DNA of 62,798 nucleotides, filler included, from Dugesia japonica (taxonomy: Eukaryota): assembly GCA_001938525.1 (NCBI GenBank). It is 4 parts of 4 records of this genome, joined end to end, with 100 filler letters (N's around TTAATTAATTAA, not from the genome) between each part and the next. Parts side by side here need not be neighbours in the genome. Positions count along the whole stretch, not along the records: positions 25,432 to 52,065 come from MQRL01532797.1; 3 more parts are not named here. The stretch is one strand, 5' to 3'. The notes under the pieces are model-generated. The model made no database searches. It was not told where the DNA came from and saw nothing but the letters and a program-made list of their open reading frames with translations. The translations under genes were made by a program, and so were the position numbers. This document shows positions 28,081 to 52,065 of this stretch, piece after piece (the stretch's first letter is position 1; each line of letters opens with the position of its first letter).

Positions 28081-28139
28081 CTCTGATGAAATAAATAGAA
28101 AAATAAGTACTTTCTTTTTTTTGAATATCTGAAACAAAA

Positions 28140-28275
28140 AGAAAGTGAAGTCTTCAAACACTTTCATCGCAAACATAAAATTTCACCAGAACAACATCAC
28201 TTAACATGGAAAAACACTAGGTACAGGCTACATTTCTACACTTCATAGAAAAAAACATGAAGAATTACTAATTAA
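28140..28275. repeat. Interspersed repeat (inverted copies at ~38460-38550 and ~45390-45530)
   Basis: Shared core CTGTTCCTAATGTTTTCCATGT..TATGATGTT...GTGAAA. Confidence 0.7.
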
Positions 28276-29665
28276 AGTAGTAGTAGTGGTAGTAGTAGAT
28301 GTAGTAGTAATAGTAGTAGTATTATAATTATAATTACGATGCTTTAATATCCAACATCAAACTTTTATGAAAGGTTTTATAAATTTCTTAAATAGTTTTA
28401 TACATTTAATTATTTATTTATTTGAGTTTCAAATTGATAATAACTATAATTATAAGATAGTTATATAATATTCTACGTTCGTAGTTATCCAAAATGTCAT
28501 CTAATGGTAATATATACAAGCGTAATGGAAACATAAAATATTTACTTATTAGATTTATGAACAGATTCTACCTTTCAAATTCTTATTGAGCTTAAGTCAA
28601 CTAATACATAATTAACAATAAGAATTTAGGTTTTTGATAAAATAAAAATGGTTTTAATTTTAACTAATTAAAATAGATTTTATACTATTTTAATATATCT
28701 TAAATTAACAACTGTTTTTCTACTTTTCCAAAACTAAAATTGTTAGGAGAGTTTGGAAAACTCCTCGAATCATTAAATCATTAATCATTTCAATTCCATA
28801 AAATTTATTTCAAATACAAACTATATCCATCATTATTCGTTCAAACAAACAAATTAAAACTCAATGCTCTAATCGGCAATTATTTTTCAAAAATTTAAAA
28901 ATTTAGATTTCAATTAATTTGATAATTTTACAGAAAATAATTATTTTTTAATAACGCATCATTGTAAAATTTTCATAAACTTTTTAAACAAAAATAAATG
29001 ATGATTTGTTTTAACATATAATTTAAAAATTTTTACAAAATTTTAAAACCAAAAAAAACTGATTATTTGTTAAAAAAAATTTCATAAAATTTCAAAACAA
29101 AAAATGATCATTTGTAATATCTTTTAAAATTTTCACAAAACTTTCATAAAATTTTCAAAAAATCACTTGTTATTAAATTATCATTTTAAAATCTTCCGAA
29201 CTTTCAAAACAAAATTGACATTTCCAAAAATTTTAATTTATTTTAATTTCTTAATTAATTTATGATTTTGAATCTTTTTTTAAAAAAGATTTTTTTTAAA
29301 ACATAATCTCCAACCAGAGCACCAAAAATTTTAATTCTCTTCTAAACTATTCACAAAAATAATTAATTTTTGATATTTCTAGATACATATTTGATAGTAA
29401 GTCTAAATTCACATGTTCGATAAATGTAAAATTATTTTGTTTCAATGATCATTTAACCAAATATACGATTGTAGTTTTAATTATTAATCTTTCATGGGAA
29501 TATATTTTTTGGAAACATCTTGCAGTCGGGATTATAAATCAATTTTGATTGATTTTTACTGAATTTTATTACAGGAAATCCTTTAAAAACAAGTAAAAAT
29601 CTGCCAAATTCGTATTTTAGTTTCAAAAATATTAATTCATGTAAAAGATAAACGAACAAAGATTT

Positions 29666-33948: not shown

Positions 33949-34706
33949 GGGGCCATCCATAAAGTATGTCACGCTATTTTTTACAATTTTTACCCCCCCC
34001 TCCGTTGTCACATTCTGTCACAAATCTCTGATCGCCTCTGAAAGTACGTCACATTCTGGAACTAAAAAATTATTATAAAAATTAACTACTTATTACAACT
34101 AAATCTAAAACACACTTCACTATTAAACTGTATTAAATTTATAAAATTACAATTATTGCGTCGTTTTTCAGAATTCATTAAAATAAAAATAAAAGCTTTG
34201 ATCAAAAGTTTTTGTTTTGTTTTTGATAATAATTCTAATTTTTTGACTTTGTCTTCGTCAGGAATTAACTTTTTTGATTTATTCAAAATTTATGTATTTA
34301 ATGGAAATATTTTTTTGAATTGATTTCAGTAAATTAAATTAATTCAAAAAAATATTTCCATTAAAAACATAAATCTAGAATAAATCAAAAAAGCCCATTC
34401 CTGACGAAGACAAATTTGAAAATTAGAGTTATTATCAAAACCAAAAAAAAATGTTGATTGAAGCTTGTATTTTTATTTTAATAACTTTATAAAATTTTAA
34501 CTTTAACTTTAACTTAATTGAGATTTAAAATTCCATATAGTGTCATAATTACTAAACGCTAGTGACATTCTGTTAGAAAACGTCAATCACAACAGAAAGT
34601 TAAACATCACTGTCAATTTCAGGGTTTTATATGTATGATAAAAAATAAAAATTTGTAACATCACACATAATCTTTAACCTCCCTCTCCTATTTTATGGAT
34701 GGCTCC
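33949..34706. mobile_element. Second copy of the Harbinger MITE (inverted) with a nested ~440-bp insertion
   Basis: GGGGCCATCCATAAAGTATGTCACGCT ... TATGGATGGCTCC; TTT flanks; colinear with the reverse complement of 32454-32800 except 34114-34552. Confidence 0.8.
34144..34480. repeat. Foldback family copy C (long palindrome with two degenerate hammerhead motifs)
   Basis: Arms of ~140 bp centred near 34330. Plus strand CATTC-CTGACGA-AGACAAATTT-GAAA-ATTA-GAGTT (34396-34430); minus strand AATTC-CTGACGA-AGACAAAGTC-AAAA-AATTA-GAATT (34231-34266). Confidence 0.8.
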
Positions 34707-35060: not shown

Positions 35061-35702
35061 AAGATTATTCTTTGTACAGATAACATTGAAAACAATTATT
35101 AATGACAAATTAACAGTTGAAAACATTATTACTTTCATAACAAATAAATAAATTAATCAAGGGTCAAAAACGGCAACGATTATTTATTAAGAATTACAAT
35201 ACTAGATGTTATTGGATAATTTATAAGGAATTTCATCTATATAATATGTCACCGGATTTTGAGGTTCCGGGATTCTGAGGTTCTGAAATTTTTATTGGAT
35301 ATTTTTAATAATATAGTATATTTAATAATATATTTATAATAATTTACAATATTTATAATATATTTACAATAATATATTTAACTAACGAATGATTTTTTGC
35401 CTTAAAGTTATTGTTCAAGCATTATTTTATAAAAAAAATTGTATAAAAGGGGGGCATAAGTCCCTGACACAGAATTATAGGGGCGGCCAAATAAATGTCA
35501 ATTTATTTTGAAAAAAATCATAATATTTAGAAAGATAAGCAAAAAGTGGTTATGGACTGGTAAAGTCAAATCGTATATCTTTTCACAGCTTTCTCTCAAT
35601 AATAATAAATTACAATTGATTCTATATGTCGAAAGTGTAATTATAAAGACAAATTTCTATAGTTTAATTTAGTTGAAAGTTCCCGAGTACACAAAACCCT
35701 TA

Positions 35703-36385
35703 TTCTCTGAATCAATTCTCTCGCTTCGTCGGCAGTAAATCGGAAAAAAATCCAAAACCTATCGACATGTCTTGTATAAAGTCTGATTGGATGAGCAGTT
35801 TGCGCATTAACATCTTCAAACTGACAAAATGAAATTGGTTCATTCGGTGGACCAGCCATATCTGTTGCTCTTGACAAACCCAACACCAATAAATCGAGAA
35901 CAAGACCGTAATATTGGGTAATAAATGAAGCGAATTGTAATCCTCTGATAATTCCAAAAGAATGAGTATGCTGCATATCTTTAAACGATATTCTGACGTT
36001 ATTTTTCGCTGACATAATCGGCAATGTTGTGATCCATAATTAAACGTAATAAACGTAAAGATTTTCTCAAAAATAGTTTCTAAGTGTACATTGCATTCGC
36101 CATCTGCAGTAACCCAGACATTCTCGAGATTGTTAATTTCTTGGCCCTATTTGTAAACCAATTGCGGTGGTGGTTCTTTATCACTAGGCTTGATCCAGGC
36201 TGGAAATAGATTTCTCTTCTCAGATTTGTACCAACAGTACTGGTCAAAATAAGCATCTGTAATTTTCTCCAACGCATCGATCTCATACACTGGAACAATA
36301 TGACTGTAAAGATCCATAAACTCGATTTTTTCTACCTCTTCGAAATTCCTCAAAGTTAACAAATGTCTTTTAATTCTGTTCAATA
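35703..36385 (-). pseudogene. PRPF8: PRP8 (spliceosomal U5 protein) intronless pseudogene fragment
   Basis: RIKRHLLT...EFMDLYSH...[11 protein letters not shown]...[19 protein letters not shown]...GECNV...[14 protein letters not shown]...[29 protein letters not shown]...HPIRLY.R..DR...[15 protein letters not shown]; TAG in place of Trp, a deletion and frameshifts. Confidence 0.92.
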
Positions 36386-37275
36386 AAATCTTAAAACTAA
36401 CTGATTTCACTGCTACTTTTATAAGGTTTAGAACCACACCATCCATATTCTTATCGGTTAAACATTTAAAATTTGATTTTACTGGTTTCTATTGGTTTTC
36501 GCATTATGTGAACTTTTCTCATTGGTATTTCTCTTTTTGTATTTCTCTTGATCGTAAAGTTTTTTGGTGGTTCTCCCTTTTTAGCTAATCTTTACTTTAC
36601 CTATGTCAAAGGTGTTAAATCTTCTTTTTGAGTTAACTGGTTTTAAATAATTCTGTATTTCCTAGTTTATTTTACTGCAGATTTTTCCGGCGTTTGGTTG
36701 AAAACAAAGCCCAATTAATGTTTTTAATTAATGATCAATTATAATTTTGGATTTAAAATAAATTATTTTATTTATTTTTCTATTAATTGAGGTTTTTATT
36801 ATTTTCTCTGATTCTGAATTATTTCTAATTTCAATTTAATAAAACTTAATTTATTGATTTTTAAAAAATCTAAATTACAATAATTTTAATGGGTTTATTA
36901 TTTTTAGGAATTTAACCTTAATTAGCTACCTATTTTCTTTTTCTAGTGTAATTTTGATGTTTGTATAAAGGTTTTTTAATTACTAAATGCTTTACCCAAA
37001 CAGATTTATAAATCTTCATTTTTAAATGAAGTGAAAACTAATAGTTTCTTTATGAACCATAATCTCGTCTTCAGTAATATTATAGTAAATGCATACAGGG
37101 CCGGTCCCAACAAAAGCGGGTACGGTGCAAAGTTACCTCACTGGCCTTGAAATAAATTTCATACAAAAAATAATAATCGTTATTTTAGTTTTACTATATA
37201 CATATACATATTAATATTACACCAAAAAAACTTTTATTAATATAATTATGTTTTAAATTATTATAAAGTTATTTA

Positions 37276-37420
37276 TTTACAATTACAATTATTGCGAGAA
37301 TAATTCTTGAACTTAACAATTGATCGCATTTGAAATTTCATTGAAATAATAGTTTCGATCAAATTGTTGTTTTGTAGATATTCGAATTTTCAACTATTGT
37401 CTTCTTCCAGAATATAACTT
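37276..37420. repeat. Foldback family copy D (single arm, degenerate hammerhead on minus)
   Basis: Tail TTACAATTACAATTATTGCGAGAATAATT; minus strand ATATTC-TGGAAGA-AGACAATAGTT-GAAA-ATTC-GAATAT (37378-37415). Confidence 0.7.
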
Positions 37421-38969
37421 TTTGCAGATTTAATTGATATTAGAAAATTTTTCATAATTTTTTGTATTTTATTAAACTTTTGATCATTTTAATCAAAATT
37501 AAATTAAATTAAAATTTAGATTTTATTTTAAATTTAATTTTAAAAATCTAATTTAATTGAAATTTTTAAATGTTTTATTAAATTGTATTTTTATTTTAAA
37601 AATTTTCAAAATTTTTCGATTTATAGAAGTTTATTTTAATTATAATTATCATAAACTACATTAATTTATTCAATTAAAAAAAGAAAAAATATATATATTT
37701 GTATTATTAAATATTATATTTTTTTATTATTTTTAACATTATTTAAAATTTTTAATTATTTATGTGTATGTTTATGTTTATGTTTATGTTTATGTTTCAT
37801 GTTTTATGTTTTATTTATGTTTTTATAAATGTTTAATGTTTTATTTATGTTTTTATTTTATGTTTTATTTATTTTTTTATAAATGTTTAATGTTTTTTTT
37901 ATGTTTTCATTTTATGTTTTATTTATGCTATAATTAATGTGAATATAAGTATAAATTACATTAATTTTTTTAAAATTAAATTTAAAAACTTTTAAAAAAC
38001 TTTTAAAAATAAATTTAATTTATTTATGTTTATTTTAATTACTATTGTAAGAGCAATTCATAGATAATGCATATTTTACGGAATTTTTTAATTTAAATAT
38101 TGTGGTATATATTATATAGTATTATATTAAAATTAATTCTTGAAATATTTTTAAAAATTATTTAGAATATTTTATATTAAAAAAAGTAAATTAGAGATTT
38201 TAGAAATGAAGACATTTTTTGTCGAATTTTTTTTTGAAAATTTATTTTGGTTTAAATATTTTATATATTGTATTGTAAAAAAATTATTTGGAATAAAAAT
38301 ATCTTTTAAATTATGGTAGTAATGTTTTGTGAAATATTTATAGTAAGAAAAATATTACCGATTTTTTTACTACTTTAAAAAAATTGGTAATATTTATTAT
38401 AATAAGGATAATTAGTATAAACTACATTGATTTCAGGTTTATTTTCTTTCATCAATATTTCTTAATGTTTCTTCTATGAAGTGTATAAATGCAGCCCTGT
38501 TCCTAATGTTTTCCATGTAATATGATGTTTTTCTAGTGAAAGTGTTTAAAGTGTTAATGCGTCGTAATATGTGGAAAATCAGGCAAACGTTCACTGAGTA
38601 GTCATCCATTTTATTTTCTTGCTAATATCATTGTTTTCATATTTGATGATTTTTTTGTTACTAATAAAAGTTTATTAAAAAGTGTAAATGAAATTACGGT
38701 TGAAAGAATTTCTCATTTTGAAAAGAAATGATGTTTTGGCCTGTGTATAAAATATAAAGAAAATGAATGGAGTAGATCAATAAATTTTATATAAACAAAT
38801 GAAACTTTTCTTAGAAATTTAAAATAACAGAAAATGTTTTGTTACTTTATTATTTAGTCTTTCTCTGCAATTTCTTTTATTTTTCAAAAGCATTTATTAT
38901 ATTGTCATTTAAAATTTTGTTTGAAATATTAATTTCATTATATAAAATTTAGATATTATATAATTTTAG

Positions 38970-39083: not shown

Positions 39084-39421
39084 GTGAGAATAATAGTTAT
39101 TTATTTAAACATTTATTTGTTTATTTAAACACTACAATAATGATTAAACTCTTAATTAGCCATTTATGGTAACTTGGTTTCCATTAATTATTTATTCTAA
39201 CAAATTATTCTTTATTTTTTAATCTTAAGTTTTATGTAAATTTTAATTATAATTATTTGTATTGAATTTTCTAATAATAAAAATTATAAATGGATTTTTA
39301 TTTCATATTAATTTTATTTTCGAAATAAAAACATCTTAAAATAACAAGACGTCAATTTATAAGATTTTTTTATATCTTTAGCCGAAATTTTTTTGATCTA
39401 TATGCATAAAATATTGTTTTG

Positions 39422-39475
39422 AAATTACAATTATTGCGAGAATAATTGTTGGACGTAACAATTGATCGTTTTTTA
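39422..39475. repeat. Foldback family copy E (tail only)
   Basis: AATTACAATTATTGCGAGAATAATTGTTGGACGTAACAATTGATCGTTTTT. Confidence 0.75.
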
Positions 39476-40499
39476 TGTTCCTTATGCCAGACTCCCAAAT
39501 TAAGTACATGATTTCCTATATAACTTTTTATCTATAAGGTTTGACGATTTTAGGTTTACATATTCTTACTCTCCGTAAAGTCCTCTATCGAATAGATACT
39601 TTAATGTTCAAATTTGAGTTACTTTTATTTTTTCCGAAAAAAATTGCCAAATCCGTTAGGAAACATTTTGGTGAGACGATATTTTAACTTTATCCAGTCA
39701 CTTTTTCATCCTGAGTTCAATGAGGCCAAATATGTAATTATACAAGTTATCTGCAAACAGAGAATTGAGCGCTAAATACTGAAATTGGAGATTTTTCGAG
39801 ATAAAACCTCATCTATTTTAACCGATCTAAAGTTTGGTGATTTTAGGTTAACATATTTAGACTCAGCGAAAAATTGTCTATCGAATAGAACCTTTGTTGA
39901 CCAATTTTGAGAAGAAAATAAACGTTTTGGAACAATTCTGTAAAATACTCGAAAAAACCAAAAATGATCCCCGTAAAATTCTGAATAGATTGATGTAAAA
40001 ATATCCATGTTAAAAAATTGAAAAAATTATTTTTGAAAATTTTGGATGTTCACCCGGATTTCATAAAAAATTTGATAGAAAAAATTTTTAATTTTCATAT
40101 TATTTAAAAACATGGACTGTTAACCCGTATTTCCGTAAAAAATCTCATAAATTTTTTTTCCCAACTAAAAACATAAGAAAAATTCTATACCACTTAATCC
40201 GATTACATAAAATCTCGACGATGAGATTAATCTAATTACATAATTTATGTGCAAAATATTTTTCCCAACTAAAAATATAAGAAAAATTCTATACCACTTA
40301 ATCTGATTACCTAATATGATGTTATTTTTAAATTCCCAACTAAAACACAGGGATTATGTTTCATTATATCACGAATCCAGCGGGGATTCGCACACAAAGT
40401 AGTACAGCGCGCTAATATCCCGCTACTAATTTTACAAACAGTCTTGGTTCAGGTCTCAAATGAAATCGAAAATTGAGACTCGTCATAAGAAGCCTATGA

Positions 40500-41008
40500 G
40501 AATTTAAGGGTGTTCTGTTCCTGTCAAGGAACCGAATATTCAATTTGGAAATGTACTGTCAATAATTGAATAGTTTGAACGAATCTATCATCCAGAAACG
40601 CCCAGAGCTTGTTAATCGTAAAGGAGTTTTATTGCATCACGACAATGTGAAACCAAATACAAGTTTAATCACCTATCGAAAAATATTGGAGCTTGGATGG
40701 TATGTACTGCCACACCCATCATACTCAAGTGATCTTGTACCGTCAGACTTTCATTTATTTCGCTCTCTTCAAAACTCCTTGTGTCGTGTAACGTTCAATT
40801 CAGACGGGGCTATAAATCAGTGCCTTATTCAGTTTTTTGCCAATAAAAATAAGTCCTTCTGTCATCGAGAAATTATGAATCTCTCTGAAAGATANNNNNN
40901 NNNNNNNNNNNNNNNNNAACAATATATTATTGATTTATATAAATTTATTTAAATAAATATATTCTTTTAAAAACAGAAAAATGCGTCATGACTTTTCGAC
41001 AACTTAAT
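40500..41008 (+). mobile_element. Mariner transposase C-terminal (DD34D-type) remnant with 3' TIR-like end
   Basis: LLHHDNVKP...LELGWYVLPHPSYSSDLVPSDFHLFRSLQNSL; end ...CATGACTTTTCGACAACTTAATA. Confidence 0.88.
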
Positions 41009-41294: not shown

Positions 41295-43845
41295 GTAAGC
41301 AGCTTAATCTGATTTTTAATTATTTTTTATGTATAATGGTAACATTAATACTTCAGCATTTCTGGTAAATTTGTAATTAAATATTTTCGATTTGTATCTG
41401 TATGTACCATTTCAATTGATGTTAATAAAAAATATAATTAATCATAGTTTTTATATTAATTGTTATTTTATTATTTATAGTGTCATGTATAAGATATTTT
41501 TAAGTTTTCATTAAAAAACGTCTAAACGTTTCCTAATGCTTTCTAATTGAAGTCATTTTATATTTTTCACAATTTTGTATTAATTTAATTTAATTTAAAT
41601 TGTCCGCCAATAATTAATGAATTTAAACCAAACAATTCAATTTGCCCACCAATTAATTGTAATACAATAAAAAACAGTTAATTCGTTTTACCCGTATAAA
41701 ATAATGTCATATTACTAAAATAAATTTTTTCTATCTGTCGGTGAGGCTTTTTTCGAATGTAGAATTTCGCGATAACCGATCATATAGCTATTAATGCTGC
41801 ACTTTCTTTTCTGTCTATCTGTATGGCTAATTTTCCTATCGATTATTACTACTTACAATGAAAATAATTGGTAAGTAGCTAAATAATTAGTCGAACGTGA
41901 CACTTACATACCACAAGAAGCAATAAATTACTCAATGCTCGATTAAAACCAACACACGTATACGGTGAGAAAAGCGTATTTTTCAATAATTTGATTGCCA
42001 CTGATGAAAATCCATGCACTCTGATTGGTTAATAATGAACCATACACACATACACAGTTAGCCGGTAAAGTTTATGAATAAACTAGATTGCAAGAATGGA
42101 AAACCAAAAACATTTCTACTCCCGGGAAGGGTTAGGTACTTTTAACTTACTCTGAACCAAAATTTTGTTTGATTGAAAATCCTTTTGAATATTACGTTTT
42201 ATTAATTAAATATTGTCGATAGTTTCAGTAAAAAGAAGTTTTTATAAAGTTATAACTTTTTTATTTAAAAACTTAAATTTATTTTCTTACAATCTTTTGA
42301 ACGAAAAGACCATGAAAAGTATTTCAAATCAGGAGTCTCAATTAAGACTATTGAGGTGGCGGCCCTAATTTTCATCTGATATATAAATTAATAAAATAAT
42401 AATACAAAGGATGCAAGATCAATGGTACACAAAAGATTAACGACTATTTTATTGATTTAAAGATAATATTTAGATTTTACCGATGTTTTGTTGGTATATT
42501 TATTGGTAAAGTTTTATCAAAATAATATTGAAGTTTTTTTCAGAAAATTATTAAATGGAATGTATTTCAGCTTCTTGAAATTTATTGTTCAAATGTATTT
42601 TGTTATGGAAACTAAAACAAAGATCATATCAAAATAACCATTTTTAGTAAATGATCCGTTGAAAAACAAAACTATTTTTTTAATGGTGCTTGATAACCGT
42701 CAAAGATTTAATATTATCAAACTACCTATGATATAAAGTATAGATGCATATTTTTAAAATAACTTTACTTTTGTTTAAATATTGTTTTGATTGTTTTTTT
42801 AGATTGGAATTATTGAATAGATTTTTTAATAGAATTTAAGACTTATGATTTAACTGTCGATTCATCACAGCTGAACCCAATTACTCATAGCCAGGGAACC
42901 AAAGCAAACGGAATTTATGAAGCTTTGTCTAAGGAGTCCATAGAATTATTAACCCCTAAAATTACGAAAGTTTTTGGAAAATATGATGACGATCGAACAA
43001 AATAGCCTAGTGAAATTAAAATCTTTGCAGAATCAAATAATGTTGATTTTTTCTCAACTTTTAATTTTCTAATAGATGGTTACGCAAAAGATCTGTGGCT
43101 AGCATTTAAGAGTTGGCAGAATGTCTTCGATAAAATGGCTAAATTTTTAAACGAAAGATTTCTCCGAATTATTGAAAAATATCGTGGAATTCGACAAAAA
43201 GAAAATTAAGTTTTTGAAAACTTCGAATTAAGATTTTTGAGATCGATCAAAGAAATATTTGAATCAGGATTGAATGTGGGTGAAAATGTTTTGCAAATCA
43301 TCAAGGAAAGAGTTAGTTTCGAAGATCTAAAAAAGATATTTGCTTTCAAACCAGAAATGAATCTAGATGAAATGCGGTAAGTGGTTGAAATTTTTTAGAA
43401 AAATGTAGAAACTTTTGTGGGTCACAAATAAATAATGATTTACTCAGAAGTGGCAGCTAGAAATTACAGACCAAGAATTAAGAAGACTGGTTTAAAAGTA
43501 TTCAAATACTATAAATCCAGGTATAATGAAACAGACGAGAAATTTCTGAAGAAATCAACGATTCCGAAAACATCAAAAAAGGTCATTTTAGAAACATGCC
43601 AACAGTTTCCATGAAATTTAATGTGAAGAAATTGTAAAATAAATCAGAAAGACTCCCTTCTCCAAGTGAAGAACAATTAAAAAGGCCTATGTTTTTGCTG
43701 CAAAATCATGGGCTTCTTAACTGCTGGCTTAAATCTTGTTTTACAATTACAATTATTGTGAGAATGATTGTTATACGTAACCATTGATCGTTTTTCAAAA
43801 TTCATTTAAAATCGATCAAAATTTGCTATTTTGGTTTATGATAAC

Positions 43846-43880
43846 AATTCTATTTTTCGACTTTGTCTTCGTCAGGAATG
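43846..43880 (-). ncRNA. Minimal type-I hammerhead ribozyme motif
   Basis: CATTC-CTGACGA-A-GAC AAA GTC-GAAA-AA-TA-GAATT: catalytic core CUGAnGA/GAAA/UH, 3-bp stem II, stem I ATTC/GAAT. Confidence 0.65.
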
Positions 43881-43901
43881 GACTTTTTAATTTCAAAAGT
43901 C

Positions 43902-43936
43902 AATTCCTGATGAAGACAAAGTCGAAATATAGAATT
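43902..43936 (+). ncRNA. Minimal type-I hammerhead ribozyme motif
   Basis: AATTC-CTGATGA-A-GAC AAA GTC-GAAA-TA-TA-GAATT; stem I AATTC/GAATT perfectly paired; predicted cleavage after A43931. Confidence 0.72.
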
Positions 43937-46299
43937 ATTTTCAAAAATCAGAAAAAATATTTTGATCGAAGCTTTTATTTTAAACGAATTTTAAATCTTG
44001 TTGTTTAATTTGTGTTTAATTCAAAATTTTAATGTTTAATTTGTGTTAAAGCTTCAGAAACTACCAATTACTCGAAAATTATCAATAATTAACAATTATT
44101 AGAAGAAGCTTACAGTAAGGAAAAGAGAGACGAAGATTGAAAGATGATCAACAATGACGTGAGCTTTTTAAATTTAAGAGACTCCATTGCTTTAATTTCA
44201 TCGATTGAGTCAATGCAATGAAAACTGAAAATCGGAATTTTGCTTCTAATTGTGATATGTATTAGACGAAAGTTTGAAGAATTTGGAGCATAGTCAAAGT
44301 AAAATAGTAAATGATCGAAATCTTGTAGGACACGGGTGCTTCAATATCAGTGATGGAAAGAGTGTGGATATTTTTCACTAGATAGATTCATTATTAAGTT
44401 AAGTGATACATTTTCAAAAGAATTGAAATCGGTAATGTGAAAAGAATAATATATATTGTGATTGTGTATGGAATAAATTCAGAATTTATTGGTGAGATAG
44501 ATATGTTTAATGCNTTTAATATTCAATTAAAAAGACTTAATAGATTAGATTCAGGAAATATTCACAGTAAATTCACTGATGAAGATCGCTTTAAAGCATG
44601 ATTACCAGCTTTTAAACCGAAAGATAATTTCAAATAAATGTTTCTAGAATTGTCAAAGCAATTTACGACAGATACTTTTAATCTTGTAAAAACGCATGTT
44701 GTAAAACATTTCATGTCAACAGTTGAGGATACTATTATAGACAAAATTCGATGTCAAATATATATGAATTGATTGAGCAACTAATTGAAAGCGATATTAT
44801 CGATGAATGCAGAAGTCCTTGGAATTTTCTAATGGTAATTATTGGTTAAAAGAATGGTGCGATTAGATTGTGCCAAGACTTTAGAATAAGAAATTATTTT
44901 ACAAATAAGTTTTCATTCCTCCTGCCAGATCCACAAACCTTGTTTGATTACCTTTATGTACTATCTTTTCAACATTGGTTGCGAGACAAGTTTATTATCA
45001 AGTAGAATTAAACGAAAAAGATATATTTAAAATGGCATTTTCAATAAAGAAGGAACAATATTCCTATAACCGCATACTATTAGGGTTATCTACTGCTCCA
45101 GCTTCATTTCATACAGTTTTGGATGGGATTTTATTTTGAGGTGTAGTTTTATATATTAATGACATTTTAATATTCCCAAAAAGTCGATCAGAAAAAAATT
45201 AAATACTTGAAATTTTATTAAATCATTAAATTATTATATATAATAATAATATGCAAATGGACTTTTAATTTATTCAATATTTAATGTTTAAAATAGAAAT
45301 ATATTTGAAATTAATTTTATTTCATTGAATTTTAATTGGTTAATTTATTTAATTATTGTAAATTACATTAATTTTAGGTTTATGTTTTTGAATTAGTAAT
45401 TCTTCATGTTTTTTTCTGTGAAGTGTAGAAATATAGTCTGTTCCTAATGTTTTCCATGTTATATGATGTTGTTCTGGTGAAATTTTATGTTTGTGTTGAA
45501 AGTATTTGAAAACTTCACTTTCTTTTTGCTTGAGGTATTCCTTAATTCTTGTTCGATTCTTTTCGTTTAATCACAAGAGATTTATTTTTTTTATTCGTTT
45601 ATTATACAGAGTGGTTTGGAAAAATCGCAATGTAAATAGGCGATGAGTAAAATTTATGTGCGATCACAATTAATTACAGTGTTTGTTTTAGCCCCATCAA
45701 AAATTTTGTTATTATTATTATTAATATATTATTTTATGATATCATATTTTATATAATATAACTTTATTATATTTTATTTTATATTAATATATTATTATTA
45801 ATATATTATTATTAATATATTATTATTAATATATTACTATTAATATATTATTAATAATATAATAAAATAAATATAATAAAGAGAATTATTTAACTTTTAA
45901 TGAAGTTCATTAAAATTATCGCCAGAATAGGAGACAAAGTTTTACCCATTTCCAGACCACCTTTTTGTTTAAAAGGTTGTTCACTGATAAAAATGCTATC
46001 AGAGACAAGGCATGTGTAGTTTTCAATTGCCTACTCAATAGTATCAAATTCAAGTCTTGGTGATAAAAATTTAAGGCGGGGTGCGGTTTTTAAACTTTAA
46101 AATTTCAAATCTTTAATAACTCTTGACTAACATATCAGATTGATATTTTGAGGAAGCAGTTATGGTCATCAAGCTTTTACGAGTCCAACGATAAGAAGTT
46201 TGTCATCATAGCATGTATCTAATCGTTTTAATTGTAATTTTAAAATTGATGTATTTCATGTTGGCTGATGTGCCATTATCTTCCTACTCTCATGTCTAT

Positions 46300-47560
46300 C
46301 ATTTTTCGCCATGAAGAAAACATTTTTCATCTTAAGTCAATGTATAGATGGTTTTCGATTCTCATCTCATTGATGATAGTTTCAACTCAAATAATTGAAA
46401 TCGCTCACTGTTAAGTCAAAAGTTTAGTTTTATCAATTTCACCGTTAGGAAAATATTTGCCAAAACAAATTAAACATTTCAATATACACTAAAAGTGTCT
46501 GATAAAGCACAACTTGCTTCATACGAAATAGCTCAACTTATTTCATAAAAAAGCGATACCTCATTCAATTGCAAAAATGTTGGTCAGTCTTGCTTGTTGT
46601 ATCATGGTGAAATATATGTTTGGTCAAAATCTAGAATCTTAAATAAATAAAATTCCTCTTTCAAACAGTACTATTAATAGGCGAATAATTGATATGTCGG
46701 AATGGTCAAATTTTTGCTCTGCAAATTGATAACTATTGTATATCAATGTGAAAGCAAAATTAATAGGATTTTTCGATTTATTAATGGAGATATTGCCAGG
46801 AAGAACAACAGAACGAGAAATAATTAATATTGTGGATAATATTTTGGAAAAAAAGCAGTTAATTTGGAATTTTTGTACAGGTATTTGTACAGATAGTACT
46901 TCATCAATGGTCGGACACAAAAAATGTTTTTTATGAAGTTTGCAAAGCAAAAAACTTCCAATCTGATTTCTACACATTTTATTATTCATCGAGAAGCTTA
47001 AGTATTTACAACTCTTCTAACAAAATTAAGCATTGTTCTAATTTGGGTAAAAAAATTATTTAATCATATTAAAAGCAGACCTTTAAAATCATGAATTTTT
47101 AAAGAATTGTGGACAGCATGGAAGCTAACTATAATGATTTATTACTGCATAATGATGTTCGTTGGCTTTCCAGAGGAAAGGTTTTAACCCGTGTATTTGA
47201 ATTGAAAGCAGAATTTTATATGTTTTTTGAAAATGAAGTATGTAAAATGACAATATTCTAACGATAATACAAAGATTTTATGATTACAGAACAAGCCGAA
47301 CTGATTTTTATCATCTGATGAAACATTAAGAATTAAACATTCGAATTTTTTTGGATACTTTTTGTATTTCAATGAAAGATGAATATCCAAAATTATCTAA
47401 GAAAGTAATAAGTATTTTAATGCAATTTTCTGTCATATTCATATTTAATTTAAATATTCATGTGAGCTAGAATGTTCACTCTCACTAATATGAAAACTAA
47501 AAAACGATCAAGAATGAAAAATCTGGTAGATGAACTGATAGTTCCTCTGTCTGAAATTAG
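46300..47560 (+). mobile_element. hAT (Buster/Charlie, ZBED5/SCAND3-like) transposase remnant
   Basis: KAQLASYEIAQLI, KIPLSNSTINRRIIDMS, LPGRTT...GICTDSTSSMVG, HFIIHREA, IKSRPLKS, LLLHNDVRWLSRGKVLTRVFELK. Confidence 0.88.
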
Positions 47561-49309: not shown

Positions 49310-52065
49310 TCCGCTACATACCCTTCGCATATTATTTTGAATCTAAACGTCTCTTTTCTGATGGATGTATCTGCAAATCCAATATCTTATCCGAGCAATA
49401 TCCACCTAATTTATTCTTTTGGTTATAATAATATTGCTCGTCCTCTTTAGATTTCCAAGGGTATTTTGGTGAAAAACAAAGCATCATTATTAGGCAATTT
49501 TTTATCTTTTAGCTTGGTGTATATTGTTGAAGTTTTTTGAACAGGTATATTCTGCTTATTCCAACATTCTTCTATTTCTTGTTCTAAGGCATGCAAAAAT
49601 TTGCTTTTCACTTACCAACATAGGCATTTGATGTGGGCTGATAAATTTTAATATTTCAAAAGGACTTTCATATCTGTATCCATTTTTCTTTAAATTTCGA
49701 GGTTCTACCTTCACTAGAACTTCTTCCCCTTCAACAAAATTCCGGTGTACTCTTTTATCTGATTCATCATTTAATTTCAGTGCNGCATTTTTCAAATTTT
49801 TATCAAATAATTCTCTAACTTCTCCATTACTTGTATTGTCATTTAGTAATGGTCCATGAATCATAATTCAAACGGTAATACTCCAAGTTGCCTTTTGTTG
49901 TGTTGCATTTATTGAAAATTGAATTCGAGGTAATAGCTTATCCCAACTAACTTCTTCATATCCACTTTTTATTGTAGTGACATTCATATCACGTAGAGTC
50001 CTGATTGTTCTTTCTGTCAATCTGTTTGATTGATGTTGGTACGGAGACGAAAATTCTTGGGTAATTTCAAATTTCTGAGTCACTCTTTTCATCAATTTTC
50101 CTTCAAATATCTTGCCTCTATCTGTCAGTATGGATTTGGATTTGCCGAATATATATATATATATATATATCCAATTCTCTTTTATTGAGTCAACTACAGA
50201 TTTTTCATCTTGTTTTGCAATGGGTGATAGGCTAACAAGTTTGCTGTATCAATCTATAATAACTAAAACATACATTTTCTTTAACTTTGATTCATCAAAT
50301 TAAGCTATATCAATGACAATTTGTTCTAACGCTCCAAATTCGGTTCGAGGTAATAAAAATTATTTTGTTTTGCCTATATATGTTTTCCCAAGTGACATAA
50401 TTCTTCATGAATGTAATTTATTAAATCGACCACTGATTTATCTGCTAAAACAATCCTCTTTGTATTTTTATCAACAAACAGTAATACATCTTCTTCCATA
50501 ACAAATTTATTAATATCTCTAAAGTATTTACTTTTTTTAAATTTTTACTAACTTGTAAACTTTTATCTTTAATATATTCAATTATTTCTTTGGTAATATG
50601 ATCATTACTATGAATTTTTATGATACTTTCTTTATCATAATTTGAACTTTGTACAATATTTATTCTTTTAACTCTAGATTTTCATCTTTTGCATCGTGAT
50701 GAGTCGTCAAACATTGAGCACACAAACTTTCTCCTATTCTTGATAATCCATCAGCATTACCATGATCAATGTCTTTACGAAATTGAAGATCAAAATCAAA
50801 TTCTGCTAGGTTTGTAATTCACGCCTAGAACTGTGAACTAATTGGTTTACTTGTTTTCTTCATAAACCCTAATGCCTTATGGTCAGTTCTGGCTATGAAC
50901 TTTTTTCCGTAAAGGTAATGCTTAAAATGAATAATAAATTCGTGTAACGCCAATAGTTCTTTTCTGGTTACACAATAANNNNNNNNNNNNNNNNNNNNNN
51001 NNNNNNATGCATAATTAATAACAGTTTCCACACCATCTCTAGACAATTGACTCAAAACAGCACCAATTGCAATGAAACTTGCATCTCTATTTAATATCAT
51101 TTTGCTTTGAGGATTTGCAAATGCCAAGATTGGAGAATTACATAATTTTCTTTTAGTAGTTTAAAGTTGCTATCACATTCTTCAGTCCACTATACGACTT
51201 CTTTTGATCCAGTTATTGCTGCATATAATGGACTGGGATTTGTTGTGTAATCTTTAATAAACCTACGATAATAATTTGTCAATCCCAAGAAGGTTCGAAT
51301 TTGGGTTGCACATTTTGAAATAACAGCATTTTTTACTTTATTAATAATGTCATCATTTGTTTCAACACTTTTAGAACTGATTGTATGACCAAAAATTTGA
51401 GTTTTGATACACTAAATATATATTTTTCAGGATTAATTTTGAGACCAGATTGCTCAATTAGTTCCAATACATTTCTTGTTTCTGACCAAAAATTAAAATG
51501 CTATTAAGATAAACAAGCACTCCAGTAAATAACATCTTGTTGAAAATTTTATGGATTAATTCTTGAAATGTTGCAGGAGCAGTGCATAATCCAGACGATG
51601 TGCGATTGAAACAAAATTGTCCCATATTCGTGCTGAAAGCTGTTTTTAATTTTGACTTATCAGTTAATTCAATTTGGTAATATGCCTGTTCTAGATCAAT
51701 TGATGAGAAAAACATAGANNNNNNNNNNNNNNNNNNNNNNATATTTATATCTGGAACAGGAAATGAATATTTTTCAGTTACTGAATTCAATTTCCTAAAA
51801 TCAAGGCACATTCTGAGAGTAAAATCTTTTCTTGGAACAATTATTAATGGAGAATTCCATGGACTTCGACAAGGTTTTATAACATTTGCTGATAATAGAT
51901 TTTGTATTAACTCGTGTATCTTGCATTCTAAATGCATAGGTTGCCTTCTTGGATTTATAAATACGGATTCTCCTTTAGTTTCTATGTTATGGATTGTCAT
52001 ATTTGTTAACCCTACATCAAATTTTGAATTCATAAAAATGTGGCCATATTTATCAAGTAATTCAA
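49310..52065 (-). mobile_element. Ty3/gypsy pol remnant (RT, RNase H, integrase)
   Basis: SPWNSPL...LRMCLDFRKLN...YYQI...KTAF...TAPATFQ; DASFIAIGAVLSQ...YCVTRKELLA...RTDHKAL; SSPYQHQSNRLTERTIRTL. Confidence 0.92.

What the first reader, a model, noticed from the sequence alone, without database searches (positions are those of the whole stretch)
43846..43936. Back-to-back minimal hammerhead ribozymes at the centre of a foldback element
Seen in sequence: the plus strand reads AATTC CTGATGA A GAC-AAA-GTC GAAA TA TA GAATT, with the hammerhead core (CUGAnGA, GAAA, UH), a 3-bp stem II, a perfect 5-bp stem I and almost no stem III. The mirror motif lies on the minus strand 21 bp away, so transcription in either direction passes a hammerhead. 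Degenerate versions occur at 34231-34266, 34396-34430 and 37378-37415, the last with a different but still paired stem I (ATATTC/GAATAT). Established: minimal type-I hammerheads with vestigial stem III occur in the terminal repeats of Penelope-like elements and are proposed to cleave as dimers. Inference: this is a non-coding ribozyme-bearing mobile family, and this copy lies in an intron of the L1CAM-like gene, so the plus-strand motif would be present in that pre-mRNA.
Basis: partly seen in the sequence, partly recalled or inferred. Interest (0 to 1): 0.85.

Follow-up and report, generated by a model that had tools for sequence, protein, structure and literature searches.

The report
Penelope-like retroelement stubs carrying minimal hammerheads
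The two mirror-image hammerhead ribozyme motifs are real, but the "foldback element" is the ordinary scar left when a Penelope-like retrotransposon inserts two short, inverted copies of its own 3' end; this is a known kind of feature, not a new mobile RNA family.

Summary
The sequence is as described. A 35-nt type-I minimal hammerhead lies at 43902-43936 (+). Its mirror lies at 43846-43880 (-). Weaker versions lie at 34.2, 34.4 and 37.4 kb. The motifs are not chance: 3 descriptor hits against 0.013 expected. They show the hallmarks published for Penelope-like-element (PLE) hammerheads.

The "foldback" at 43741-43990 is a single insertion flanked by a 12-bp target duplication. It consists of two head-to-head, 5'-truncated copies of one sequence. 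That sequence has a fixed 3' end, and an extra ~57-nt hairpin-bearing "tail" sits on one side only. It is the 3' UTR of a PLE: a degenerate RT/GIY-YIG remnant at 45352-46089 (-) runs straight into the stretch that precedes the hammerhead in the longer copies.

Related PLEs on metagenome contigs carry the same minimal hammerhead 70-100 nt after their stop codon. Both stems show compensatory changes there, and two contigs show the same inverted partner.

In this copy the hammerhead is locked in a 62-bp hairpin, disfavoured by about 46 kcal/mol, and is probably inert. The L1CAM-intron claim could not be verified. This is a new member of a known kind, of low to moderate interest.

The parts
43741..43990 (.).
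   Evidence: Self inverted repeat. A profile of the arms matches 43896-43742 (-) and 43887-43995 (+). The insertion is bounded by a 12-nt direct repeat.
43729..43740 (.). Left copy of the target-site duplication (TTAAATCTTGTT)
   Evidence: 12-nt exact direct repeat with 43991-44002. Only 0.3% of random window pairs do as well.
43991..44002 (.). Right copy of the target-site duplication
43741..43890 (-). Long arm: 5'-truncated element copy read on the minus strand, with the tail
   Evidence: Alignment A2; nhmmer E 1.9e-40.
43741..43797 (-). About 57-nt 'tail', present on this side only. It holds a 9-bp hairpin at 43749-43771.
   Evidence: Absent from the right arm. Shared with the copies at 37278 and 39420 and, with an internal gap, with 34149. 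Three-way identity 85%.
43846..43880 (-). Minimal hammerhead motif on the minus strand: core intact, 4-bp stem I, vestigial helix III not palindromic
43881..43901 (.). 21-nt centre where the two truncated 5' ends meet; it forms the top of the hairpin
43892..43990 (+). Short arm: 5'-truncated element copy read on the plus strand, without the tail. It ends 59 nt after the predicted cut site.
   Evidence: Alignment A2; nhmmer E 4.2e-24.
43902..43936 (+). Minimal type-I hammerhead motif, fully intact. It has a 5-bp stem I, a 3-bp helix II with an AAA loop and an AUAU vestigial helix III. The predicted cut is after 43931.
34149..34485 (.). Second inverted-pair insertion of the same family. Its arms reach about 70 nt further 5'. 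It is flanked by an 11-nt duplication (34138-34148 and 34486-34496). Hammerhead relics lie at 34231-34266 (-) and 34396-34430 (+); each fails the descriptor.
37278..37477 (-). Single-orientation copy with the tail and a broken hammerhead relic at 37378-37415. It lies about 930 nt downstream of a PLE endonuclease remnant on the same strand.
39420..39487 (-). Extreme 5'-truncated copy: the tail plus a few bases only
   Evidence: nhmmer E 2.4e-16.
45352..46089 (-). Degenerate remnant of the PLE open reading frame. The RT piece matches P0025 residues 353-388. The GIY-YIG endonuclease C-terminus matches P0025 residues 639-704. The remnant is 5'-truncated and internally shortened.
45256..45348 (-). 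3' UTR directly after the PLE stop codon. It is homologous to the stretch just upstream of the hammerhead in the 34-kb arms. The homology stops where stem I would begin.
   Evidence: 78% over 77 nt, E 1.9e-10, and 75% over 69 nt, E 9e-9. These were the best non-self hits.
38409..38541 (-). Second remnant of the same PLE endonuclease C-terminus
   Evidence: 82% to 45350-45482, E 1.5e-32.
28099..28324 (+). Third remnant of the same PLE endonuclease C-terminus
   Evidence: 90% to 45388-45540, E 3.8e-55; ORFs listed.

Best explanation
The feature is the 3' terminal part of a Penelope-like retrotransposon (PLE), inserted as two inverted, heavily 5'-truncated copies.

In this PLE family the layout after the RT/GIY-YIG reading frame is about 95 nt of 3' UTR, then a 35-nt minimal type-I hammerhead, then about 60 nt, then an optional tail of about 50-57 nt that contains a stem-loop.

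When such an element integrates, reverse transcription starts at one of two sites near the 3' end. This gives copies with or without the tail. It often stops early, which gives the 5' truncation. An inverted truncated partner copy is often laid down as well. The result here is a 250-bp palindrome-like scar with a hammerhead in each arm and a duplicated target site.

The hammerhead belongs to the parent element's RNA. There it is thought to act in long or tandem PLE transcripts, pairing with a second copy through its palindromic vestigial helix III. In the stub at 43.9 kb it is a passenger. Any transcript across the stub folds into a 62-bp hairpin that sequesters both motifs.

Shown: the sequence anatomy, the homology to a PLE 3' UTR, the target duplications, and the stem covariation in relatives.

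Inferred from the literature: the integration mechanism, cleavage as a dimer, and any catalytic activity.
For: (1) Motif. The core boxes, stems I and II and the UH site are at the stated coordinates. [quoted passage not shown]

(2) Ends. Read outward from the centre, all six arms in the piece share the outer (3') end and differ at the inner (5') end. The inner end lies 12 nt upstream of the hammerhead in one copy, about 70 nt upstream in two others, and one copy is tail only.

(3) Tail. It sits on one side only in both pairs. Two discrete 3' ends lie 59-60 nt and 106-110 nt after the cut site. In the anole PLE the corresponding distance is 85-92 nt, with two RT start sites in a stem-loop and extension of both DNA strands (PMC11167929). 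The published PLE scheme shows an inverted 5'-truncated copy and a tail at one end (PMC8557442).

(4) Target duplications of 12 and 11 nt, p about 0.003 and 0.004.

(5) Arm relatedness. Arms are more alike within a copy (83%) than between copies (74-79%), and they do not group by side.

(6) Link to a coding PLE. The 73-aa ORF at 45352-45570 (-) matches the C-terminus of RT plus GIY-YIG proteins (P0025 E 2.9e-12, P0024, P0036). An RT piece matches P0025 co-linearly. The UTR after its stop is homologous to the stretch upstream of the hammerhead in the 34-kb arms (E 1.9e-10).

(7) Relatives.
- L007 carries the same build of hammerhead about 98 nt after the stop, with different stem sequences.
- L005 has a hammerhead arm head-to-head with a PLE copy truncated in the endonuclease.
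- L009 has both an inverted arm and the longer copy's own relic about 74 nt after the stop.

(8) Covariation on five sequences: 90% of cells paired, 7 of 8 pairs with double changes, 0 of 500 shuffles as good, and slid registers poor. The one free core position takes three different bases while the fixed core positions are unchanged in these five.

(9) Conservation. The hammerhead segment is the best-kept part of the arms apart from the tail: 78% against 63% in the flanks.
Against: No full-length PLE with this exact 3' end is present in the piece, and the genome itself could not be reached. The link rests on a 77-nt UTR homology and on short metagenome contigs.

The PLE remnant at 45.3 kb loses homology exactly where the hammerhead should begin.

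Two related PLE contigs show no hammerhead core in the UTR available. L003 has 456 nt of UTR and L006 has 264 nt.

Both window pairs are truncated almost symmetrically. That would also fit snap-back copying, or central deletion in a pre-existing palindrome.

Only five arms carry the motif in the window. The covariation signal is driven mainly by one distant sequence (L007).

No Rfam hammerhead model reaches threshold.

Catalysis was not tested.
Confidence: 0.85

Rival explanations
1. An independent non-coding foldback or MITE-like mobile family. Its long inverted repeats each carry a hammerhead, and it is moved as a unit.
For: Two copies (43.9 and 34.3 kb) are palindrome-like with target duplications, and both are truncated nearly symmetrically. 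There are at least four loci in 26.6 kb. No full-length coding parent with this 3' end lies in the piece.
Against: The outermost ends are not inverted repeats of each other, because one side carries an extra tail of about 57 nt. The copies at 37.3 and 39.4 kb have a single orientation and keep only the 3' part. Duplication lengths differ, 12 against 11 nt. The arms group by copy, not by side. The inner part of the longer arms is the UTR that follows a PLE stop codon. In L005 and L009 the partner of the arm is a PLE copy that still carries coding sequence.
Confidence: 0.08
2. A chance hammerhead-like string inside an AT-rich hairpin, mirrored only because the hairpin is a palindrome.
For: The core is short. 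Helix II has only 3 bp and helix III is absent. The isolated 41-nt RNA folds no better than shuffles (z -0.2). No Rfam hammerhead match was found. The mirror copy follows automatically from the inverted repeat.
Against: The descriptor is expected 0.013 times in the piece. The same build recurs at the same distance from the stop codon of related PLEs with compensatory stem changes. The motif region is better conserved than its flanks.
Confidence: 0.03
3. A hairpin RNA gene, such as a miRNA-like or endo-siRNA precursor, whose hammerhead letters are incidental to its present role.
For: The 125-nt hairpin is very stable: -64 kcal/mol, z -15.5. It draws sub-threshold matches to many miRNA precursor models.
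Against: All those matches are far below the gathering scores (54 against 90 bits at best) and hit unrelated plant and animal families on both strands. That is typical of any long hairpin. The hairpin is explained by the inverted insertion. The second copy has a different centre.
Confidence: 0.04

Closest known systems
Minimal hammerhead ribozymes (min-HHRs) in the pseudo-LTRs of Penelope-like elements (Cervera and de la Pena 2014, PMC4209133; dimer cleavage in Lunse et al. 2017, known here only as cited in PMC6765202)
   Same: Type-I topology. Short stem I (4-6 bp). [quoted passage not shown] G10.1-C11.1 pair. One-pair palindromic helix III. Location near the 3' end of a PLE. Many dispersed single motifs from truncated copies. 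The paper notes pairs of motifs on opposite strands.
   Different: Helix II is only 3 bp with a 3-nt loop here, and also in L005 and L007. The Schistosoma families in that paper have 7-8 bp. The two motifs here are 21 nt apart, against the 100-700 nt quoted. Activity is untested.
Canonical PLE insertion architecture (Craig et al. 2021, PMC8557442; anole Poseidon in vitro work, PMC11167929)
   Same: High 5' truncation. An inverted 5'-truncated partner forming inverted repeats. An extension ('tail') at one end only. Reverse transcription starting at two sites in or near a stem-loop tens of nt downstream of the hammerhead cut site. Insertion into AT-rich DNA.
   Different: The tail is about 50-57 nt here against the 30-40 bp described. 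In the anole element the hammerhead overlaps the start of the reading frame, whereas here it follows the stop codon by about 95 nt. Both window pairs are truncated nearly symmetrically.
Animal non-LTR retrozymes (tandem type-I hammerhead repeats; PMC7229834; preprint 10.64898/2026.07.22.740005)
   Same: Non-coding sequences with type-I hammerheads, thought to derive from PLE pseudo-LTRs.
   Different: Retrozymes are head-to-tail tandem arrays with a hammerhead in each unit. No such array exists here. The copies here are inverted or single.
Rfam hammerhead families (clan CL00010)
   Same: The core boxes.
   Different: No match at gathering score in the piece. None at E up to 10 around the motif. 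The only match was a 16.8-bit Hammerhead_HH9 hit on the relative L007, against a gathering score of 52. These models expect a real helix III.

Membership tests
PLE-type minimal hammerhead (min-HHR) | Core boxes CUGANGA and GAAA plus a UH cleavage site in type-I order | tested here: met
   43902-43936 (+) and 43846-43880 (-). Also L005 54-88 (-) and L007 1197-1231 (+).
PLE-type minimal hammerhead (min-HHR) | Stems I and II base-paired and supported by covariation | tested here: met
   90% of cells paired. 7 of 8 pairs show double changes. 0 of 500 shuffles reach this, and slid registers give 7-50%. Caveat: five sequences, driven mainly by L007.
PLE-type minimal hammerhead (min-HHR) | [quoted passage not shown] | tested here: met
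   An A in all five aligned sequences. The feature is described in PMC4209133.
PLE-type minimal hammerhead (min-HHR) | Conserved G10.1-C11.1 pair | tested here: met
   G-C in 4 of 5 sequences and G-U in one.
PLE-type minimal hammerhead (min-HHR) | Palindromic positions 15.2-16.2, the vestigial helix III that allows a dimer | tested here: met
   AUAU at 43927-43930. AAUU in the 34.4-kb arm, L005 and L007. Not met by the minus-strand motif at 43846-43880.
PLE-type minimal hammerhead (min-HHR) | Lies in the terminal repeat or 3' region of a PLE | tested here: met
   The UTR after the PLE stop is homologous to the arm sequence upstream of the motif. L007 and L009 carry the motif 70-100 nt after the PLE stop.
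PLE-type minimal hammerhead (min-HHR) | Self-cleavage, as a dimer | not testable with these tools
   Thermodynamic folding only. Monomer -3.3 kcal/mol, predicted homodimer -11.3 kcal/mol.
Rfam hammerhead families | Score at or above the family gathering threshold | tested here: not met
Penelope-like element insertion | Reading frame with RT followed by a C-terminal GIY-YIG endonuclease | tested here: met
   Remnants only in the window. They match P0025 and P0036, which carry RVT_1 plus GIY-YIG.
Penelope-like element insertion | Fixed 3' end with variable 5' truncation | tested here: met
   Six arms in alignment A2.
Penelope-like element insertion | Inverted 5'-truncated partner copy and a tail at one end only | tested here: met
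   Pairs at 43741-43990 and 34149-34485. Also L005 and L009.
Penelope-like element insertion | Target-site duplication | tested here: met
   12 and 11 nt.
MITE / foldback DNA transposon | Terminal inverted repeats reaching both outermost ends | tested here: not met
   One end carries about 57 nt with no counterpart at the other end.
MITE / foldback DNA transposon | Target duplication of one fixed length | tested here: inconclusive
   12 against 11 nt, from two copies only, with boundaries good to about 1-2 nt.
Non-LTR retrozyme | Head-to-tail tandem units, each with a hammerhead | tested here: not met
   No tandem array at the loci. The arms are inverted.
miRNA precursor families of Rfam | Score at or above the gathering threshold | tested here: not met
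   Best 54.1 bits against 90. Many unrelated families match on both strands.

The most novel reading that the evidence does not exclude
The head-to-head PLE stubs are more than scars. Because each forms a long perfect-stem hairpin containing the element's own hammerhead and 3' end, read-through transcripts could feed the host's small-RNA pathways. That would give sequence-specific silencing of the very region the element needs for processing and priming. A second option is that this PLE clade's unusually small hammerhead (3-bp helix II plus triloop, 35 nt) marks a distinct minimal catalytic solution.
Probability: 0.08. Interest if true: 0.45.

Novelty: new member of a known kind. Interest (0 to 1): 0.25.

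Why it matters
It shows that a striking "double ribozyme palindrome" can be fully explained by the known insertion habits of Penelope-like elements. Scans that find mirrored hammerheads should therefore look first for a one-sided tail, a target duplication and a nearby RT/GIY-YIG remnant.

It also adds a PLE lineage from very AT-rich genomes. In that lineage the hammerhead is reduced to about 35 nt, yet its stems still covary across distant relatives. This supports the view that the motif is under selection in the parent element.

Tried and rejected
Rfam found nothing at gathering threshold over the whole piece. In E-value mode around the motif it gave only generic sub-threshold miRNA-hairpin matches.

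Exact-pattern scans of metagenome, prokaryotic-genome and viral contig collections used an unbiased anchor from the tail and then the hammerhead core. They gave nothing except one chance match inside a bacterial coding region, L001.

A spurious ORF across the repeat was used as a protein query to fish out other copies. It found no candidates.

A gypsy-like RT ORF was searched to find the source genome.

An exact look-up of a PRP8-like ORF found nothing on record.

P0022/L002 (65% G+C) was a spurious hit and was dropped.

L003 and L006 are related PLE contigs. Neither shows a hammerhead core in the UTR held.

A target duplication for the 37-kb copy was not significant.

About 30 ORFs picked by length and G+C between 39.5 and 48.5 kb gave no Ig or FN3 match.

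Full report
OBSERVATION

The plus strand at 43902-43936 reads, in order:
- stem I 5' strand AATTC
- core box CTGATGA
- one extra A
- helix II GAC / AAA / GTC
- core box GAAA
- TA, then TA (the UH site; predicted cut after A43931)
- stem I 3' strand GAATT

The reverse complement of 43846-43880 gives the mirror motif, 21 nt away. The mirror has a 4-bp stem I, and the two bases between its GAAA box and its UH site are not palindromic.

The pattern CTGANGA-N10-GAAA occurs 3 times in the window against 0.06 expected. My relaxed min-HHR descriptor requires stem I of at least 4 bp, an optional extra base, stem II of at least 3 bp and a UH site. It finds 3 sites against 0.013 expected in 300 dinucleotide shuffles. 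All three sites belong to one repeat family, so they are not independent events.

The 'degenerate versions' at 34231-34266, 34396-34430 and 37378-37415 are real relatives. None passes as an intact hammerhead. One has a core substitution plus an indel. One has a weakened helix II. One has a broken first core box.

WHAT SURROUNDS IT

Both motifs lie in a 62-nt-arm inverted repeat at 43829-43953. That repeat is part of a larger self-inverted stretch at 43794-43995.

A BLAST search and a profile search of the piece find six arms of one family:
- 43896-43742 (-)
- 43887-43995 (+)
- 34337-34142 (-)
- 34323-34488 (+)
- 37477-37278 (-)
- 39487-39420 (-)

Aligned as read outward from each centre (A2), the arms show three properties:
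- They share the outer end and differ at the inner end. The inner end is 12 nt upstream of the hammerhead at 43.9 kb, about 70 nt upstream at 34.3 kb, at least 60 nt upstream at 37.4 kb, and beyond the motif altogether at 39.4 kb.
- There are two discrete outer ends. One lies 59-60 nt after the predicted cut site. The other lies 106-110 nt after it.
- The extra segment, or tail, contains a 9-bp hairpin at 43749-43771. In each pair the tail is present on one side only.

Each pair is flanked by a direct repeat. It is 12 nt at 43729-43740 and 43991-44002, and 11 nt at 34138-34148 and 34486-34496. Only 0.3-0.4% of random window pairs do as well.

Arms are 83% alike within a pair and 74-79% alike between pairs, and they do not group by side.

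LINK TO A CODING ELEMENT

On the minus strand at 45352-46089 lie two short ORFs. One matches the RT of P0025, a 713-aa protein with Pfam RVT_1 and GIY-YIG, at residues 353-388. The other matches its C-terminal endonuclease at residues 639-704. Other hits (P0024, P0036) have the same two-domain build.

The remnant is 5'-truncated. It has at least one internal deletion. An AT-rich tandem-repeat block sits between the two pieces. I did not count stops and frameshifts exhaustively.

Two further remnants of the same endonuclease end lie at 38409-38541 (-) and 28099-28324 (+).

The roughly 95 nt that follow the stop codon (45348 down to 45256) are the best non-self match in the piece to the sequence just upstream of the hammerhead in the 34-kb arms. 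The matches are 78% over 77 nt (E 1.9e-10) and 75% over 69 nt (E 9e-9). So the 'foldback' arms are the 3' UTR of this PLE. In this particular remnant the homology ends where stem I should start.

RELATIVES ELSEWHERE

The source genome could not be reached. Contigs encoding related endonuclease ends were informative.
- L005 (583 bp, 24% G+C). A hammerhead arm on the minus strand (motif at 54-88) lies head-to-head with a PLE copy truncated inside the endonuclease on the plus strand.
- L007. The same build of hammerhead lies at 1197-1231, about 98 nt after the stop. It has the extra A, a 3-bp helix II with a triloop, an AAUU vestigial helix III and a 6-bp stem I. Its stem sequences are entirely different.
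- L009. A hammerhead relic lies about 74 nt after the stop. A second, inverted arm lies upstream of the truncated copy. The two arms are about 96% alike across the roughly 120 nt they share (77% over the whole alignment), and each has one lesion.

On the five descriptor-passing sequences (A6):
- 90% of cells pair.
- 7 of 8 pairs show changes on both sides.
- No shuffle out of 500 reaches this, and slid registers are poor.
- The fixed core positions are identical in all five.
- The one free core position takes three different bases.

Within the window the hammerhead segment is 78% identical between arms, against 63% for its flanks. The tail is 85% identical.

L003 and L006, two other related PLE contigs, show no hammerhead core in the UTR they hold. 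The motif is therefore not universal in the clade, or it has decayed there.

COMPARISON WITH WHAT IS KNOWN

Cervera and de la Pena (PMC4209133) define PLE min-HHRs. They list as non-trivial hallmarks the extra nucleotide between 9 and 10.1, the G10.1-C11.1 pair and the palindromic 15.2-16.2. They also note pairs of motifs on opposite strands and many single motifs from truncated PLEs.

Craig et al. (PMC8557442) describe PLE insertions as highly 5'-truncated. They often have an inverted 5'-truncated copy that forms inverted repeats, and a tail often at one end only.

The anole Poseidon study (PMC11167929) shows four relevant things:
- The protein cleaves and extends both DNA strands.
- Reverse transcription starts at two nearby sites in a stem-loop, 85-92 nt downstream of the hammerhead cut.
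- The tail is the stretch between these two sites.
- The ribozyme was active only with the protein present.

The window matches each of these points. The differences are of degree: a tail of about 57 nt, a hammerhead placed after the stop rather than at the ORF start, and a very short helix II.

HOW IT WORKS, AND WHAT IS INFERRED

Shown: the anatomy, the homology, the duplications and the covariation.

Inferred: the two arms were laid down in one integration event. In the parent element's long or tandem transcripts the hammerhead cleaves as a dimer.

For the stub itself, forcing the hammerhead stems in the 125-nt transcript costs 46 kcal/mol relative to the hairpin, an equilibrium probability of about 1e-33. 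The isolated 41-nt motif folds no better than shuffles. I therefore consider the copy at 43.9 kb a passenger relic, whichever strand is transcribed.

THE HOST-GENE CLAIM

About 30 ORFs, picked by length and G+C between 39.5 and 48.5 kb, gave no Ig or FN3 match. The neighbourhood is largely transposon debris:
- a gypsy-like RT fragment at about 44.4-45.1 kb (+)
- the PLE remnant at 45.3-46.1 kb
- a gypsy-like pol remnant at 49.6-52.0 kb (-)

The only host gene recognised is a PRP8-like exon (Pfam RRM_4, E 3.7e-30) at 35644-36039 (-). Whether 43.9 kb is intronic cannot be told from this piece.

VERDICT

The hammerhead call and its PLE affinity are supported. The 'foldback mobile family' reading is replaced by the standard PLE insertion scar. 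This is a new member of a known kind.

Noticed in passing
window 35644-36488 (-): PRP8-like coding exons. 35644-36039 matches Pfam RRM_4 of spliceosomal PrP8 (E 3.7e-30). A second ORF at 36150-36488 looks like more of the same gene by eye but gave no Pfam hit. The PLE stubs at 34.1-34.5 kb and 37.3-37.5 kb flank these exons and may sit in its introns.
   Followed up: partly
window 49559-52033 (-) and 44407-45136 (+): Remnants of Ty3/gypsy-type LTR-retrotransposon pol genes (RVT_1 E 3.3e-9 and 1.6e-4). Both are split over several short ORFs and partly masked by N. The second lies between the PLE remnant and the 43.9-kb stub.
   Followed up: partly
window 40566-40952 (+): A 128-aa ORF that by eye resembles the C-terminal part of a mariner-type transposase. 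Pfam gave no hit for the unmasked part, so this is unconfirmed.
   Followed up: partly
window 45256-45348 (-) and onward to about 45150: In the PLE remnant, homology to the family stops exactly at the position where hammerhead stem I should begin, and AT-rich sequence follows. It is unclear whether this is a hammerhead-less variant, a later replacement or a deletion.
   Followed up: no
L009 1-742 and L005 1-583 (metagenome contigs): Both show the same head-to-head junction: a short hammerhead-bearing arm against a longer PLE copy truncated in or before the endonuclease. In L009 the two arms are about 96% alike across the ~120 nt they share (77% over the whole alignment), which suggests a fairly recent event.
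   Followed up: yes
window 34149-34200 (-): The tail of the 34-kb pair lacks about 27 nt present in the other three tails, yet keeps the terminal part. This could be a shorter tail variant or a later deletion.
   Followed up: no
window 37759-37927: A (TTTATG)n microsatellite of about 28 units in a stretch of 11% G+C. It lies between the 37-kb stub and the endonuclease remnant at 38.4-38.5 kb.
   Followed up: no
window 46733-47258 (+): Two ORFs that by eye resemble a hAT-type or domesticated transposase fragment. There was no Pfam support at the thresholds used.
   Followed up: partly
L003, L004, L005 (ENA metagenome contigs, 24-27% G+C): The closest relatives of the window's PLE come from environmental, partly aquatic metagenome assemblies with the same extreme AT-richness. 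This hints that the source organism or its kin is a small aquatic animal. The organism was not identified.
   Followed up: no
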